The notes below the pieces were generated by a model. That model ran no database searches. It was not told the origin of the DNA and saw only the letters and a program-made list of their open reading frames with translations. Both the position numbers and the translations under genes were made by a program. DNA of 64,000 bases, taken from assembly GCA_904063045.1 (NCBI GenBank), contig CAJFCJ010000009.1:1302968-1366967 (forward strand), given 5' to 3'. Source of the DNA: Dimorphilus gyrociliatus. Its lineage: Eukaryota > Animalia > Annelida. Positions within the stretch are counted from its first letter, which is position 1; each line of letters starts with the position of its first letter. This document shows, piece by piece, positions 36,576 through 43,367 of the stretch.

Positions 36576-37414
36576 CTATGGTAACAGTCTGTTTTTTTGT
36601 AATAAAGAGCTAAATGTAATTGTCAAAGTGATGGGATAGTAATAATAATAAAAAACTACAGCAACTATTTGTATTTCTATTGTTTCTTTATATTTTTTGT
36701 ATGTCTATATTGTTTATTTTATTTTGACGAAAAAAAAATGCCATCTATCGGTTAGGATAAAATACATTTGAGATTTTGCTTCCTAATTAGTTAACTTGTC
36801 AAAAGAGAGAGAAAATAAATCGTATCAGCTACTCTTTGCTATTTAAATAATAAATATCGGTTTATATACAGTATACAGATTATTGTATTTAGATGGTTGA
36901 AACTGTATATATATCTATATACTGTATAATTGTATATATATACAGACTTAATATACGATATGTTGTACAGTAAATAAATATAAATAGAAAAGTCCACTTG
37001 AGAATAATCAATAGGAAGGGTTAAAGAAAGCAAAATAAAAGGAAGGAAAGCATTGACGAAAGCTATAATTAGATATTCTGTCATTGTTTTCTTTTTAAGA
37101 GGATTACCCAAATTATTTCTTATTCAGGTTATAGATGGAGGAAGAGATGAAATATCCTAAGTGGATATTAACGAGAAGGATGATTGTTAGTTTGTATTTT
37201 TCCTTACTCTGTACTTTTATGATATCTATATATATCTTTATATATATATATATACAAATTTATTTTAAAGCATATAAAATGATCAATTTAAATAAGAACA
37301 GGAAAAAGATAGCAAACATAACAATAATGGAAAGGAGTATAAAGCCGAGTTCTAATTTTAAATACGCAGGTGTGGTAAAATCGATGGACAAATATTACTT
37401 TTCTACAGTTTGTC

Positions 37415-37645
37415 ATGAAGGATAGAACGAACGCTGAACGGATAATTAAAGAGCGTCGAATGGCTGCAAATGCCCGAGAACGACGAAGAATGGAGGCGTT
37501 AAATAATGCTTTTGAAAGGCTTAGAGAAAGTGTCTCAACATTAAGAAACGAAAAAAGAAAGAGAAAATTAAGTAAATTCGAAACTTTAAAATTGGCCAGA
37601 ATTTATATTGATGGATTGAGACGAATGCTGGAAGAATGCGGTTGA
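37415..37645 (+). CDS. Atonal-like bHLH transcription factor (core domain; a 5' exon near 37135 is possible)
   Basis: [24 protein letters not shown]...[18 protein letters not shown] matches the atonal-family bHLH signature. Confidence 0.85.
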
Positions 37646-37850
37646 CTTGTTTTTTTTTCAGTATATACCGTAATTTTATACAAATCTTCTGTATATATAT
37701 ATATATATATATACTGTATATATATATGTCTAGATATATATATATATATATGTATATGTACACAAGTATATATGCTGTGGACAATATTAAAAATTAGACA
37801 ACAATCTAGATAAAATATACATTCTGTAAAAAAAAAAGAGTCTGTGGGTA

Positions 37851-39227
37851 TCACGCATGCAATAATTGATGACGTACGTCGGTTAGTGTCTTACCGTAAA
37901 AATTGTTGAAATCCCAGGTATTCTGATCTTCGATATTAGGATCATTTATAAGTTTTCCTATTCCCCAAATATTAGCTTCGGCATATACCAACTCCGTTCC
38001 TTTTGTCTTGGCGAGCTCGGCGTTTAAATAGCTTGATGAAGTAAATTTTTTTATTAAAACTTCCTTAAGAAATATATGTCTTTTATCCATCCATATTCTA
38101 TCAGAATAATTTTTCACACTTCTTCCGCAAGACTTCCAGACTCTGAAGCTGTTACTTGTGAGAACTCTTTGAGCCAGAGTTGGGTCATTAAAGACCTGAC
38201 ATTTCTTGTACATTACGTAGTGTATTGGAGAATGAAAACATTCATTTTCAAGATAAATAGGTGTGTAATGACTTGGACCAAATACGGAATTATCAGTAAA
38301 ATAAGTAAACTCGGGACTTTTTTTAATGTAAGGATCGTTACTATCTCGTAATTTCTTCACTACCTCTTCCGCACTTATCCTATCTTGAGGTTTTGATTTT
38401 ATCATGGACCTTATTATAACTTTTAGAGCGCCGATTTCGGGAAGGAAATCATCATGATAAAATTCAATAAAATTTTCGTCAGGTCTTATTATTAACGCTA
38501 AACCAATAGGTTGTTTACCTAGACCCTCTTCCGAAGGGGCTAAAGGTGCCATTAGAGGATCTCTACTATAATTTAGCATAGCCAGGAATATCAATCCCAT
38601 TGCAAATACATCGACAGAATCCGAATACGTTTGATCAACTTGATATAACTCAGGAGCCCAAAAACATGGAGTTCCGCCCCGAGTTTCGAATAAACTTTTC
38701 CCTGTAGTTTTCCATTCTTTGCCACAGCCAAAGTCTGAAAGTTTAAAAATCGTTTCTCCATTTCCATCAGTTGTAACAAGCATATTTACGGGTTTAATAT
38801 CTCTGTGAATAAAGTTATTTTTATGCAGATGGGCCATTCCTTCAGCTAACTGCAGCATAATTTGCTGTTGATGTTTTATTGTAAATTTACCACCTTTAGA
38901 TTGATAATATTTAGGTAAATCTCCAAGGTTACAGTATTCAAAAATTAGTTTTAAAGAATATTCATCTGTGACTATGCCGAAAATCTCTAGGATATTTCTA
39001 TGCAGTGGAATTTTGTAATGTAAAAGAGCTTCTTCTCTTGCAATATCCAAATCTTCAGCGTCATTTATATTAAAAATCTTTAATGCCTTCGTTTCGTTAG
39101 TGTTGAGATCTTGACATTTATAAACAATTCCAAATGATCCTTGTCCCAAGTATTCTTGAATCTTGATGGTTGTATCTTTGCATGTTACAGTCTTTCCAAT
39201 TTCGGCTTTTATCAAAGAATTCATCAT
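37851..39227 (-). CDS. Intronless Ser/Thr kinase (STK35/PDIK1L-like features) fused to a C-terminal NADAR/YbiA-like domain
   Basis: Kinase motifs GQGSFGIVY, ALK, REE, HRDIKPVN, DFG, GGTPCFWAPE, DVFAMG. From about aa 307: FTYF..., FHSPIHYVMYKK, KSCGRSVKNY, W.DKR, KKF, LAKTKGTELV, IWGIG, NFYGKTLTDVR follow the NADAR pattern. Confidence 0.88.
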   Translation of the reverse strand: MMNSLIKAEIGKTVTCKDTTIKIQEYLGQGSFGIVYKCQDLNTNETKALKIFNINDAEDLDIAREEALLHYKIPLHRNILEIFGIVTDEYSLKLIFEYCNLGDLPKYYQSKGGKFTIKHQQQIMLQLAEGMAHLHKNNFIHRDIKPVNMLVTTDGNGETIFKLSDFGCGKEWKTTGKSLFETRGGTPCFWAPELYQVDQTYSDSVDVFAMGLIFLAMLNYSRDPLMAPLAPSEEGLGKQPIGLALIIRPDENFIEFYHDDFLPEIGALKVIIRSMIKSKPQDRISAEEVVKKLRDSNDPYIKKSPEFTYFTDNSVFGPSHYTPIYLENECFHSPIHYVMYKKCQVFNDPTLAQRVLTSNSFRVWKSCGRSVKNYSDRIWMDKRHIFLKEVLIKKFTSSSYLNAELAKTKGTELVYAEANIWGIGKLINDPNIEDQNTWDFNNFYGKTLTDVRHQLLHA

Positions 39228-39489
39228 TTTGAAGAATTACCGTTAAAACTGATCGAAGACGTTTAATATGATTGCAAAATGAAAGTAAAAAATGGCGCGT
39301 TTCTATTTTCATTTTACTACTTGTGTCAGTCATTTATAAAAATATCACGAATTGAATATATTTATATATTTAAGCCTATATGAATGAAATAAATAGATTT
39401 ATTTAAATGTTACAACGATTAGAAGCAAATACTTCTATACAGAGAACAACAATAAATCGACTACATGGACATGATAGGCTCATAGTTGT

Positions 39490-41824
39490 TTACAAGTTTG
39501 TAGCACATTCTGTAGTTTTGTTGGATTCTCCTACAGTAAAGCTCACTAAGCGATGATCTTCACTTTGATCGGGTTCAGGTAGAGGATCTTCGTCAAAAAC
39601 TTCAGGAAATTCTTCAACTTCGATGTTAGCTCCAGGGGCAAATTGATGAGCGATTTCCTCAAATGTTTTATTTCTAGTTTCCGGAACGAGACAGTAAACG
39701 AAAATCAAAAATAACACCATAAGACCAAGGAAGAGTAGGAAAGTGAAATGTTTCAATTCTTTTTGTATGCTCTCGAACGAAATTGCTATGATAAACGTGC
39801 CAAGCCAATTGACAAAGCCCGCTAAACTCATTGCCAATGGTCGAGGACCTTGTCGAAATAGTTCTGCACCTATCATTTGCGGAATTGGTCCTAAACCAAC
39901 CGCAAAACCAATAACATAAATAATCACACAAACTACCGCTACTATAGACAGCCATTCAGCTTTTTTCTGTCAAGGAAAATAAGGAAAATGAAAGTAAAGA
40001 GATATTTGTGGATGAATCATACCTGGAAGTTTTGCGCAACAGTTATTATAGCAAGATCAAATATCATTACTATCATTGGATATAGAAGAAGAGCCCTTCG
40101 ACCAGCTATATCCATTATAGGTATCTATACAAATAAAAAATGAAAGGAATATTAATACAATTTTTAATTAGATGAGTTATTTTTGAATATTCACCGCAAT
40201 AATTGTCATAAGGACATTTACGGCATTTGTTCCAATTACCGCATAAGGGATATGGTTTGCAGAAACACCTGCCTCGTTAAAAATTCCATTTGAATAGAAG
40301 AATATCTACGAATGGTCATATAGTTTAATGGAAAGAATAACGGGAAAACATCTTGCAACAAACCGCATTAATTCCTGAAAATTGCTGTACAACTTGCAAG
40401 CAACAAGCAATTAACAGTGGCATCCTAAGAGCAGGATTCAAAAAAAGCTTTTTTAAAGTGTAAACTTCCGTTTTAGTACTTTTTGAATCAGATTGCTCAG
40501 TATCCATTTCTTCAATGTCAGTTGTAATATCTTTTCTATTTCGAAAGAATCTTAAAGCCTTTGAAGCCAATTCTCTTTCATTTTTTATCAATAATAAGTA
40601 TCTTGGACTTTCTGGCAAGAATGGGAGAATAGCTAAGCATAATAGTGGAGGGATCGCATTAATACTGAGAACATAGGGCCAAAGTTTTTCTGTGCCTAAT
40701 ATTCCTTCTATTCCGAATATGCTAGCTGCTAAAATACCTATTGTAATGAAAAGTTGATGTAGTGTACCGAATGCTCCTCTATAGTTAAAAGGGCAAATTT
40801 CCGAAAGGTACATTGGTGCTAAGGACGTGGAGAGACCTGAGTGAACTCCCACAAGTACTCGACCCACCATCAGCAACTCGGGGGTCCTACTTATTACGGG
40901 AAAAGTTGATATAATTGCTCCCAAAATAGCAAAAATATAACTCAATAGGATAGCTTTTTTTCGTCCAATTTTATCAGCTATAAATCCAGCCGAAAAAGCC
41001 CCTATCATGCCACCAGGAAGGAAAAGAGCAGTTGTTAATGACCATAGAAAAGTCAGGGAAGCATCTGATATTGGTTGATTATTTCTTTCCACGTATGTTT
41101 CATTATAGAAACTTTTTATAAGCTGCAGCATAAAAACAATAATTTATGACCTTAGAGGAAATTAAAAAGTGGAAAAAAGTTTATAATTTACGGGTGAGAT
41201 CTGGTTCAAAGCTCCAATATTGTATCCAAAAAGGAAGCTAGATCCAAAAACTATAACGAAAGCTGTTACGCAGAGGTTAAGGGTTATTCCCTAAAAAAAA
41301 AACATAAGAATTAATATTAGGCCTATATATGGCAACAGTATGTTTTATTAAATACCGATGCCAATTCTGGTTTTAGGTTATCGTGATACTCAGATCTTGT
41401 CACTTGTAAACTGCCTTTGCTAGCCACAGATGATATTTTGCTAGCAGTTCGATCAAAAGGCTTATCAGTGGTTTCTGTAGAGCTATATTGAGTAATCCTG
41501 TCAGCTATATATAACTTCACGAAATCTCAACTAACGAACCTTACTCTTCTATACAAACTACTTCTAGAGGATCTACGTTTGGAAGAACAGGAACTGTCCG
41601 TGCTTTTTTGACTAACATTACGCAATTTCTTTTTTGGTTCATTTTCTTTAATGCTGTCACCCTAAAAATAAAAAGTAAAAAAAAAAATATAATAAATTAT
41701 TGATTAATTAATCCTTTAGACATATAGCAGCTCTAGATGTAATTATTTATTATATTTGGCAAATGACTATAAAATATGATATTCTTACATCTGACATCAT
41801 TTTCTCTTTAGCCGAATCGTCCAT
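39490..41824 (-). CDS. Facilitated glucose transporter (SLC2A class I-like, MFS sugar porter)
   Basis: FGYNIGALN, DKIGRKK, PESPRYL, QQFSGINAV, GLGPIP, VPETRNKTFEEI; start MDDSAKEK at 41824. Confidence 0.95.
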
Positions 41825-43367
41825 GGTGAATATTTTCGTTTTTTTTTCTAATCAATAAGCTAAGATAGGTATTCTTGTAAATTCTTTTCCAAATGAGACA
41901 CTTCTTTGTTTATCTATAAACATTTATTTACCGTATTTAAATCGGTTATAAAGGTTAAAATAGCATGTATACAATTTTTAAAATAGTGAAATAGGGGATC
42001 TAACCCAAAGTAATCCCTATTCAACTATTTCTTAAGCAATTTATTATGCAAATTAATCTAAAAAATTATGCTATAAACGTTACGAATTTGAAAAGTTTGA
42101 TAAACGATAGAATATACCTATTTACTAACAATTTGAGTATTCTCTGACGCTCTAAGAAAGAAATTAATACGCCCTTGCATTGAAGGGGCAACTCAAGGTC
42201 AAGGACTATACTGCAATTCTGAAGTTAGCTGCAATGTTGTACCCTAGTGCCATCTGTAGTAAGGGAAAAGTATATAATCCAGATACGAATAGTGGCAATA
42301 TACTGTATATATGAGAAATCAGTATGTAAATTAAATGTATATATAAATACCAAAACACGTAGCGGTCTAAATTTCCTTGGCTAAAGTGACATCCACACTG
42401 TAATTCACAGTTGAGTAACTTTCCCAGGTTGTTGACAGTTTTCAGATTGTTTACTTTAAGGTGACCTTCAATTAAGCCACGAATAGAGTCCTTTGACAGA
42501 TTCAAAACTATAGTAGAAATAATTATTATCCCATACTTTCGAGTATAGGTCTTCTACTTTAGGTTGGCCAGAGCATAATCTAATTTATATTAAAAAAAGA
42601 AAATATTATTAAAATAAGATGTTGAAATTAATAGTATTAAGACGTAAATGATCCAATTCCAAGTCCAAATGAGTAGATAAAGAGGAGGAGACGTTTTTAA
42701 CAACTTCATCTTTTTAATTATACCTATGGTAATGAGAAAAGTATTCTATTTCTTGACAGTAAACTCTTACGGAAATTTTATCCTGCTGGAACTTGGTAAA
42801 CTGTCGTTATTTTACCATTTTATTTTTCTATATTTCCTCTGGGAAGGTCTTCACTCAAATCCAGAAATAAACTTGAAGGAGCTGTCATTGTAATAGGACA
42901 TTATCTTTTTTTGTAATAAACGGTGAAGAGATTACAAACCTTTTATTGTAGATAAAATGGTGATAGTTCTTTTATTGACACAAGAACATAAGAATATTTG
43001 AATTTTCAATTCTAAAATAAATTTTCAGATTGATTTCTTGGCTGTAAAATAAATCGTTTCGAAACTGGTGCTCATTTCACTCTTGGTTTAGCTTTTGAGG
43101 TAGGATTTTGACGGTTGGCCGACTATTTAATCTTAGATTATACCCTAGATCTGGTAATAGTTAGCAACAATATTATTTCAGCGTGAAGTGAAGACCTTAT
43201 GTACGAGCTTCAGTTCAGGAAATTACTGCCTAGCTTTGTAAATTCCGAAGAAATAAAAAGACAACAATTGATTTTTAACATCTTATAAACTGTGTACTTT
43301 TTAAGATTGTGTCACGAATTAACAGAAAGAGCAACACATATTTAATAGTTTTTAGCAACTCTTTAAT

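What the first reader, a model, noticed from the sequence alone, without database searches (positions are those of the whole stretch)
37851..39227. Ser/Thr kinase fused to a NADAR (YbiA-like) domain: candidate ADP-ribose-sensing kinase
Seen: one intronless 458-aa ORF among intron-rich neighbours. The kinase (about aa 20-295) has all catalytic motifs. Residues ~307-458 follow the NADAR pattern end to end. Known: NADAR proteins include E. coli YbiA (N-glycosidase for riboflavin-pathway intermediates) and hydrolases that remove ADP-ribose from guanine in DNA, acting as antitoxins of DarT1; they are patchily distributed in animals. Inference: I know of no characterised kinase-NADAR fusion. It could couple detection of ADP-ribosylated nucleic acid or damaged metabolites to phosphorylation (innate immunity, toxin or damage response). 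The lack of introns suggests retroposition or transfer of the NADAR module.
Basis: partly seen in the sequence, partly recalled or inferred. Interest (0 to 1): 0.85.

Follow-up and report, generated by a model that had tools for sequence, protein, structure and literature searches.

The report
Kinase fused to catalytically stripped NADAR domain
A tiny marine worm makes a one-exon gene that joins an intact-looking protein kinase to an ADP-ribose-handling (NADAR) domain. That domain keeps its ligand-contact residues but has lost its catalytic acids, so it may sense ADP-ribose rather than remove it, although nothing about its function has been tested.

Summary
Window 37851-39227 (minus strand) is one 458-aa ORF with Pkinase (aa 23-291, E 2e-48) and NADAR (aa 316-455, E 2e-23) domains.

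- **Fold:** an AlphaFold model of aa 296-458 (pLDDT 94.5) matches the Phytophthora NADAR-ADP-ribose structure 8bau (TM 0.84) and E. coli YbiA (TM 0.74).
- **Transcript:** one RNA-assembly contig lies colinear on 37767-39258. It spans both domains without an intron, while the neighbouring transporter gene shows GT-AG intron skips in the same run.
- **Organism:** very probably the annelid Dimorphilus gyrociliatus.
- **New point:** all ten ADP-ribose-contacting residues of 8bau are kept, but the acidic catalytic residues are gone (E43 to I335, E125 to Y415, Asp of DxxW deleted). The domain also sits on a seven-fold long branch. I therefore favour a non-hydrolytic ligand-binding module that steers an active-looking RD kinase. 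E417, two residues along the same strand, could still rescue catalysis.
- **Rarity:** the architecture is rare but not unique. Mastigamoeba balamuthi has a kinase-NADAR protein with a canonical NADAR.
- **Origin:** retroposition or horizontal transfer is not supported, because composition is host-like and the genome's other NADAR gene also lies in a single open frame.
- **Earlier scan notes:** none on other DNA mentions NADAR.

Function is untested.

The parts
37851..39227 (-). Complete single-exon CDS, 458 codons plus TGA stop (protein P0001)
37767..39258 (-). Stretch covered colinearly by one transcriptome contig (1523 nt; 31 nt of 5' UTR and at least 84 nt of 3' UTR that runs into a TA repeat)
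   Evidence: table 8 record 2: 0 other letters, 0 gaps. The run behaves as RNA because the neighbouring gene shows GT-AG skips.
38355..39161 (-). Protein kinase domain, aa 23-291, with all catalytic motifs. It is an RD-type Ser/Thr kinase (HRDIKPVN, DFG, GT..APE).
38328..38354 (-). Very short junction, aa 292-300. The last kinase helix ends at about aa 296 and the first NADAR strand starts at about aa 302.
   Evidence: secondary structure of the full-length model; pLDDT 73-76 in this block
37863..38327 (-). NADAR (YbiA-like) fold, aa 301-455 (Pfam match aa 316-455)
38223..38225 (-). Codon I335, at the position of the conserved motif-1 glutamate (E43 of Phytophthora NADAR, E88 of E. coli C7 NADAR)
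   Evidence: residue roles from PMC11543638
37977..37985 (-). Codons Y415-A416-E417 in the last beta strand. Y415 sits at the catalytic glutamate position (E125 of Phytophthora NADAR). E417 lies two residues on. The Asp of the following DxxW motif is deleted before N419-I420-W421.

Best explanation
This is a genuine, transcribed, lineage-restricted gene of a small annelid, very probably Dimorphilus gyrociliatus. It encodes an active-looking RD-type Ser/Thr protein kinase joined by only about 5-10 residues to a fast-evolved NADAR fold.

The NADAR part keeps the residues that hold ADP-ribose in the solved NADAR structure: adenine stacking, pyrophosphate and proximal-ribose contacts. It has lost the acidic residues that act on the distal ribose. 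I therefore read it as a non-hydrolytic ligand-binding module, a 'reader' of free ADP-ribose, an ADP-ribose derivative, or ADP-ribosylated nucleic acid. This module would recruit or switch the attached kinase. The canonical stand-alone NADAR elsewhere in the genome would remain the hydrolase.

Shown: ORF, domains, fold, transcript, residue pattern, rarity. Inferred: ligand binding without hydrolysis, and any coupling to kinase activity. One possible coupling is ligand-driven clustering and activation-loop autophosphorylation, as with PKR on dsRNA.
For: - **ORF and domains:**
- **Transcript:** a colinear contig spans both domains in a run that shows spliced neighbours.
- **Fold:** the NADAR model has pLDDT 94.5. 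Foldseek top hits are 8bau (NADAR with ADP-ribose, TM 0.84, E 3e-9) and YbiA 2b3w (TM 0.74); the next hit has E above 1. The full-length model has pLDDT 87.9 with a well-folded kinase.
- **Residue map against 8bau and 16 other NADAR domains:**
  - Kept: K342, K365, G368, R369, V371, Y374, D376, W379, R383 and W421, matching ADP-ribose contacts K50, K75, G78, R79, V81, Y84, D86, W89, R93 and W133 described in PMC11543638.
  - Lost: I335 replaces E43 (E in 14 of 16 others). Y415 replaces E125 (E in 14 of 16). The Asp of DxxW is deleted (an acidic residue there in all 16).
- **Published mutagenesis:** mutating the equivalent Glu/Asp residues inactivates E. coli C7 NADAR or stops rescue from DarT1. 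The equivalents of Glu, Asp and Trp are the residues cited as critical for YbiA (PMC9303266).
- **Gene-specific acceleration:** the domain's branch is 3.49 against a median of 0.5, and 0.82 for the same genome's stand-alone NADAR. Pfam scores are 84 against 176 bits.
- **Division of labour is possible:** a canonical NADAR exists in the same genome, and there are only two NADAR loci.
- **Convergence:** an independent kinase-then-NADAR protein in an amoebozoan suggests the pairing has a functional logic.
Against: - No binding, hydrolysis or kinase assay exists.
- E417 lies two residues after Y415 in the same predicted beta strand, so its side chain should face the same way. In E. coli C7 NADAR the working acid (D171) is likewise offset by two from the aligned glutamate, so catalysis might survive.
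- E88A in E. coli C7 had only a minor effect in vitro.
- The gene has no detectable orthologue, so purifying selection cannot be measured.
- One RNA assembly shows presence only. It does not show level, ends or strand.
- No coordinates were available to inspect the modelled pocket.
Confidence: 0.5

Rival explanations
1. Bifunctional enzyme. The NADAR domain is still a hydrolase (ADP-ribosyl-guanine/cytosine glycohydrolase or N-glycosidase) using E417 as a relocated catalytic acid, and the kinase acts on the same pathway.
For: E417 is two residues from the canonical position in the same strand. Catalytic acids already sit at shifted positions in different NADAR subfamilies: D171 against E173 in E. 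coli C7, Asp in BC4488, His in phage NADARs. E88A keeps in-vitro activity. The TIGR02464 riboflavin-type N-glycosidase model scores just over its cut-off (74.3 against 73.7).
Against: Three acidic positions are missing at once (motif-1 Glu, strand Glu, DxxW Asp). Loss of the first or the last already abolishes function in tested NADARs. The very long branch indicates changed constraint.
Confidence: 0.2
2. The NADAR fold is a decayed or repurposed scaffold, for example a protein-protein or autoinhibitory module, that no longer binds any ADP-ribose ligand. The protein is simply an orphan kinase with a C-terminal appendage.
For: The branch is long and the profile score is halved. No orthologues exist to show conservation of the pocket. 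Other animal multi-NADAR proteins also carry repeats without the two glutamates (Haliotis N-terminal repeats). NADAR1 of nematode SNA-3 lacks the conserved residues.
Against: All ten ligand-contact positions are retained although the domain changed at about 70% of positions relative to any relative. That pattern is hard to get by neutral decay.
Confidence: 0.2
3. A young, functionless or dying gene: transcribed but not under selection, or not translated.
For: It is an orphan in 5.8 and 1.84 billion-protein searches. Only one RNA data set was available.
Against: The open frame of 458 codons in a 33% GC genome has a chance probability of about 5e-16. Every kinase catalytic motif is intact. Both domains fold with high confidence. 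Codon composition is host-like. The transcript contig is bounded tightly around the ORF.
Confidence: 0.07
4. Origin claim of the first reader: the gene or its NADAR module arrived by retroposition or by horizontal or viral transfer.
For: It is a single exon. NADARs are common in phages and giant viruses, and ladybird beetles acquired NADARs by HGT. The nearest feature-space and structure clusters are phage and bacterial NADARs.
Against: It lies inside a 2.69-Mb animal contig between spliced genes. GC 0.346 in both halves and GC3 0.26-0.31 are host-like. The canonical NADAR of the same genome also lies in one open frame. No poly(A) tract or target-site duplication is seen at the 3' end. In the tree, a sister relationship to the worm's own NADAR is not rejected (AU 0.285), nor are phage-like (0.114) or Mastigamoeba (0.109) placements.
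Confidence: 0.1

Closest known systems
Phytophthora nicotianae NADAR (PDB 8bau) and the DarT1-associated / stand-alone NADAR hydrolases (PMC11543638, PMC11125620, PMC12945103)
   Same: Same fold (TM 0.84). Same ADP-ribose contact residues (K50, K75, G78, R79, V81, Y84, D86, W89, R93, W133 equivalents). Same domain family by Pfam.
   Different: Lacks E43, E125 and D130 equivalents. Fused to a kinase. No DarT partner. Evolves about 7 times faster than the relatives sampled.
E. coli YbiA (PDB 2b3w), N-glycosidase for riboflavin-pathway intermediates
   Same: Core fold (TM 0.74). The TIGR02464 model scores marginally over its cut-off.
   Different: The subfamily-defining glutamate in the last strand is Tyr here. 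The motif-1 Glu and the DxxW Asp, cited as critical for YbiA activity, are absent.
Mastigamoeba balamuthi EP00727_P006159 (P0214, 859 aa), uncharacterised
   Same: Same order of domains: protein kinase, then C-terminal NADAR.
   Different: TKL-like kinase at only 29% identity. About 66-residue linker and a 370-residue N-terminal region. Its NADAR is canonical (137 bits, both glutamates and the Asp present). Probably an independent fusion.
N-terminal NADAR repeats of Haliotis rufescens multi-NADAR proteins (P0193, P0131) and NADAR1 of nematode SNA-3
   Same: Animal NADAR domains that lack the two glutamates. Haliotis has Leu and Tyr at the very positions where this protein has Ile and Tyr. There is a weak tree affinity (58/73).
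   Different: They sit in tandem NADAR arrays, not next to a kinase. They keep the DxxW Asp. SNA-3 acts in trans-splicing, which this annelid lacks.
Reader/eraser split in macrodomains and the PKR logic (ligand-binding domain driving an RD kinase)
   Same: Works-like analogy only. A hydrolase fold that keeps ligand binding but loses catalysis becomes a reader. A nucleic-acid or ligand sensor is fused to an RD kinase.
   Different: Unrelated folds. No evidence here for dimerisation or activation.

Membership tests
Eukaryotic protein kinase superfamily (Pkinase, PF00069) | Profile match over the curated cut-off | tested here: met
   165.6 bits against 31.7
Eukaryotic protein kinase superfamily (Pkinase, PF00069) | Catalytic residues: glycine loop, AxK Lys, alpha-C Glu, HRDxKxxN, DFG, APE, subdomain XI Arg | tested here: met
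   G28-G33, K50, E65/66, H141-N148, D165-G167, A191-E193, R283. The kinase core folds with pLDDT mostly above 90.
A named kinase group or family (CMGC, CAMK, PDIK1L/STK35 etc.) | Clear best match to one family | tested here: inconclusive
   Best solved relatives are a mix (CDK5, CDKL, STK33, CDPK, MAPKAPK2), all about 80-92 bits. At most 34% identity to any kinase of its own genome. At most 40% to any of 1.84 billion representatives. PDIK1L-like is only an Atlas lead.
NADAR superfamily (PF08719) | Profile match over the curated cut-off | tested here: met
   84 bits against 35.1; 86.8 bits in the genome scan
NADAR superfamily (PF08719) | YbiA-like alpha+beta fold | tested here: met
   pLDDT 94.5. 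8bau TM 0.84 and 2b3w TM 0.74 are the only hits with E below 0.001. Atlas NADAR clusters reach TM 0.82-0.90.
NADAR superfamily (PF08719) | ADP-ribose contact residues of 8bau | tested here: met
   All ten positions are identical
Catalytically competent NADAR hydrolase | Motif-1 glutamate (E43 Pn / E88 Ec C7) | tested here: not met
   I335. 14 of 16 comparison domains have Glu.
Catalytically competent NADAR hydrolase | Acid (Glu, or Asp/His in subfamilies) in the last beta strand (E125 Pn / D171 Ec C7) | tested here: inconclusive
   Y415 sits at the aligned position. E417 at +2 in the same strand might substitute.
Catalytically competent NADAR hydrolase | Asp of the DxxW(G) motif (D130 Pn; cited as critical in YbiA) | tested here: not met
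   Deleted, reading N419-I420-W421. An acidic residue is present there in all 16 comparison domains.
Catalytically competent NADAR hydrolase | Hydrolysis of guanine/cytosine-ADP-ribose or N-glycosidase activity | not testable with these tools
   Needs a biochemical assay
DarT1-NADAR (DarTG1) toxin-antitoxin | Genetic linkage to a DarT ADP-ribosyltransferase | tested here: not met
   Neighbours are a sugar transporter and other spliced animal genes. There is no PF14487 match in the genome, although the controls were silent too, so genome-wide absence is not shown.

The most novel reading that the evidence does not exclude
The NADAR domain is a pseudo-hydrolase that specifically recognises base-ADP-ribosylated DNA/RNA (the lesion made by pierisin/ScARP/DarT-type genotoxins) or an ADP-ribose-derived messenger, and so switches on the fused kinase. 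That would be the first NADAR 'reader' and an animal kinase that signals nucleic-acid ADP-ribosylation, working alongside the worm's canonical NADAR 'eraser'.
Probability: 0.25. Interest if true: 0.85.

Novelty: new variant of a known kind. Interest (0 to 1): 0.55.

Why it matters
The NADAR papers read here describe the physiological roles of animal NADARs as still unclear (PMC11125620, PMC12945103). All characterised NADARs are hydrolases. A NADAR fold that keeps the ligand contacts, drops the catalytic acids and is welded to a kinase would be the NADAR counterpart of macrodomain readers. It would link nucleic-acid or small-molecule ADP-ribosylation to phosphorylation signalling. It gives a compact, soluble-looking 458-aa protein on which that idea can be tested directly. 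The independent kinase-NADAR fusion in an amoebozoan suggests the coupling is not an accident. If the domain turns out inert, the gene is just an orphan kinase of one worm.

Tried and rejected
- **Complex prediction**, kinase (aa 1-298) against NADAR (aa 299-458): score 0.01, 'no answer'. This is no evidence either way about docking of the two domains.
- **The search for homologous proteins:**
  - Whole protein: no hit above 37% identity and none carrying both domains.
  - NADAR part alone: only 8 distant stand-alone NADARs.
  - NADAR region of the Mastigamoeba protein: only itself.
- **The search for related loci:**
  - With the protein in metagenome contigs: one ordinary bacterial NADAR, picked up through a chance word in the neighbouring gene.
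  - With the protein in viral contigs: nothing.
- **The look-up of encoding contigs** for P0001 and P0214: not on record.
- **Own-genome searches** for DarT (PF14487) and ADPrib_exo_Tox (PF03496): no match, but the control genomes were silent too, so this is uninformative.
- **NADAR tree and AU tests:** these cannot place the domain, and four alternative sisters are not rejected.
- **PADLOC:** only generic kinase (mad6, PD-T4-6) and NADAR (PDC-M42C) family-level matches. There is no system-level meaning in an animal.
- **Literature:** the first search for 'NADAR' plus 'kinase' was swamped by the surname Nadar. The de Souza and Aravind 2012 paper that defined NADAR is not held. The search for '349 contigs' did not find the genome paper.
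- **Rejected readings:**
  - Contamination: the gene lies in a 2.69-Mb contig with spliced animal neighbours.
  - Exon of a larger gene: the RNA contig is colinear and a stop lies 3 codons upstream of the ATG.

Full report
**1. The observation**

The ORF listing finds a single 458-aa ORF at 37851-39227 on the minus strand. Only three sense codons precede its ATG in the open frame (open frame 461 aa). At the window's base composition (about 33% GC), 458 stop-free codons have a chance probability of about 5e-16.

Pfam gives Pkinase at aa 23-291 (E 1.9e-48) and NADAR at aa 316-455 (84 bits against a cut-off of 35.1, E 1.9e-23). NCBIfam agrees: TIGR02464 at aa 313-455 scores 74.3 against a cut-off of 73.7.

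The kinase carries every catalytic motif (positions):
- glycine loop at 28-33
- K50
- E65/E66
- HRDIKPVN at 141-148
- DFG at 165-167
- GT..APE ending at 193
- D206
- R283

It is an RD-type Ser/Thr kinase.

**2. The gene is expressed as one unspliced message**

The only public run holding the stretch (X1, 2017, library type not on record) behaves as a transcriptome. On the neighbouring gene its contigs skip nine stretches of 56-204 nt bounded by CT..AC, which is GT..AG on the minus strand. That neighbour is a sugar transporter (Sugar_tr, E 1e-25).

In the same run one 1523-nt contig lies colinear on 37767-39258 with no mismatch and no gap. It runs from 31 nt upstream of the ATG to 84 nt past the stop and on into a TA repeat. 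It is separate from the transporter contig, which ends at 39456.

Contigs cannot give strand, ends or level.

**3. Whose genome**

The assembly has 77.9 Mb in 349 contigs. Introns here are 56-70 nt.

The genome paper reports a roughly 78-Mb assembly in about 350 scaffolds, a median intron of 66 bp and no trans-splicing (PMC7854359). I take the identification as very probable, but I checked it only through these statistics.

**4. The C-terminal domain is a NADAR fold**

AlphaFold2 on aa 296-458 with a 17-row alignment gives pLDDT 94.5 and pTM 0.88. Foldseek against the PDB returns only two significant hits:
- 8bau, Phytophthora nicotianae NADAR with ADP-ribose (TM 0.84, E 3e-9)
- 2b3w, E. coli YbiA (TM 0.74, E 1e-6)

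ESM Atlas neighbours are all NADAR clusters (TM 0.82-0.90). The full-length model has pLDDT 87.9 and pTM 0.71, with a well-folded kinase. The last kinase helix is at 286-296 and the first NADAR strand starts at about 302, so the junction is only some 5-10 residues.

**5. The active site is selectively stripped**

The phmmer alignment to 8bau, the MAFFT alignment with 16 other NADAR domains and a column count agree. Residue roles come from Schuller et al. 2023 (PMC11543638).

All ten ADP-ribose contacts are retained:

| 8bau residue | This protein |
|---|---|
| K50 | K342 |
| K75 | K365 |
| G78 | G368 |
| R79 | R369 |
| V81 | V371 |
| Y84 | Y374 |
| D86 | D376 |
| W89 | W379 |
| R93 | R383 |
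| W133 | W421 |

The three acidic positions around the distal ribose are not:

| 8bau residue | This protein | The 16 comparison domains |
|---|---|---|
| E43 | I335 | Glu in 14 |
| E125 | Y415 | Glu in 14 |
| D130 (Asp of the DxxW motif) | deleted | an acidic residue there in all 16 |

In E. coli C7 NADAR, mutation of the equivalents (E88, D171) abolishes rescue from DarT1. D171A/N and E88Q abolish hydrolysis, whereas E88A has only a minor in-vitro effect. The Glu, Asp and Trp equivalents are the residues cited as critical for YbiA (PMC9303266).

One caveat matters. E417 lies two residues after Y415 in the same predicted strand (412-417), so it should face the same side. In E. coli C7 the working acid is also offset by two from the aligned glutamate. 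I therefore put loss of hydrolysis at roughly two in three, not higher.

**6. Evolution**

- The genome has only two NADAR loci. The other (G000:C8:38088-38552, L002) is a stand-alone gene with canonical Glu, Glu and Asp positions. It scores 176 bits and is 36% identical to the fusion's domain.
- In a maximum-likelihood tree the fusion's domain has a terminal branch of 3.49, against a median of 0.5 and 0.82 for the stand-alone copy. The acceleration is therefore specific to this gene.
- Its placement is unresolved. It groups weakly (58/73) with the N-terminal repeats of two Haliotis multi-NADAR proteins, which carry Leu and Tyr at the same two glutamate positions.
- Sisterhood with the worm's own NADAR (AU 0.285), with the Mastigamoeba domain (0.109) or with a phage-like group (0.114) is not rejected.
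- GC is 0.346 in both halves and GC3 is 0.26-0.31, similar to the neighbouring exons and the stand-alone NADAR.
- There is no poly(A) remnant directly after the 3' UTR. An A9 tract lies about 190 nt downstream, beyond the TA repeat.
- The kinase half has no close paralogue in the genome (at most 34% identity). It also fits no clear kinase family.

Retroposition or recent transfer is thus not supported, and not excluded for the deep past.

**7. How rare it is**

- Nothing above 37% identity and nothing with both domains turned up among 5.8 billion clustered proteins in a word-seeded search.
- An exhaustive phmmer scan of 1.84 billion representatives lists 150 best hits. A local phmmer run with the NADAR part over all fetched proteins found only one other protein with both domains.
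- That protein is P0214 from Mastigamoeba balamuthi: 859 aa, kinase at 380-635, canonical NADAR at 702-847. It is 29-30% identical in each domain and has a different kinase type and linker, so it is probably an independent fusion.
- Weaker fusions could hide below rank 150.
- Among large Atlas clusters the structural search listed NADAR alone or with Macro, ARH, capping methyltransferase, HAD or cytidylyltransferase partners, and no kinase.
- No searchable paper combines NADAR, ADP-ribose and 'protein kinase domain'.

**8. Mechanism proposed**

- **Shown:** an expressed kinase-NADAR polypeptide with an intact kinase catalytic set, an intact ADP-ribose-contact set and a missing acidic catalytic set.
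- **Inferred (confidence 0.5):** the NADAR part binds but does not cleave an ADP-ribose-containing ligand. That binding positions or activates the RD kinase. One possible route is ligand-templated clustering and activation-loop autophosphorylation, by analogy with PKR. The stand-alone NADAR would do the erasing.
- **Context from the literature:** animal NADARs are hypothesised to protect against guanine/cytosine-ADP-ribosylating bacterial genotoxins, and ladybird NADARs act in antibacterial defence (PMC12945103).
- **Rivals:** a still-active hydrolase using E417 (0.2); an inert or protein-binding scaffold (0.2); a functionless young gene (0.07).
- The docking test between the two halves gave no verdict.

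**9. Verdict**

It is a new variant of known kinds. It is rare, uncharacterised and directly testable, but it is a single-species orphan with no functional data. Interest is 0.55.

Noticed in passing
window 39456-42883 (minus strand): A sugar-transporter (Sugar_tr) gene lies immediately upstream; its stop codon (39490) is about 260 nt from the kinase ATG. The RNA contig shows nine short GT-AG introns (56-204 nt). An AATAAA lies at about 39398-39403.
   Followed up: partly
window 37682-37766 and 37302-37681: A TA-rich microsatellite sits at the 3' end of the kinase-NADAR message. Another transcript contig (2289 nt, laid in + orientation) ends at 37681 on the other side and splices leftwards beyond 37302. 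The two genes may therefore converge on the repeat.
   Followed up: no
window 39289-39298 (minus strand): A GCGCCATTTT (YY1-like) motif lies about 30-40 nt upstream of the 5' end of the transcript contig. It is a possible core-promoter element and was not tested.
   Followed up: no
window 42881-43028: A CT..AC skip (42881-42940) and a GT..AG skip (42958-43028) lie side by side in the RNA contigs. This suggests a plus-strand gene starts head-to-head with the transporter gene.
   Followed up: no
G000:C8:38088-38552 (L002:1417-2043, minus): This is the worm's only other NADAR locus: a stand-alone gene in a single open frame, with a canonical active site (176 bits). It is the natural positive control and possible parent of the fused domain.
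   Followed up: partly
P0131, P0193 (Haliotis rufescens), P0177 (Branchiostoma): Animal proteins built from tandem NADAR domains: at least seven in the 4240-aa abalone protein P0131, three in P0193, two in amphioxus. In both abalone proteins the first repeat has Leu and Tyr in place of the two catalytic glutamates.
   Followed up: partly
Several genes separate them, so the proximity is probably coincidental.
   Followed up: no
L018:741-6504: In a bacterial metagenome contig a stand-alone NADAR (P0125) lies two genes from a 1117-aa Pkinase-WD40 protein on the opposite strand. This is probably chance.
   Followed up: no
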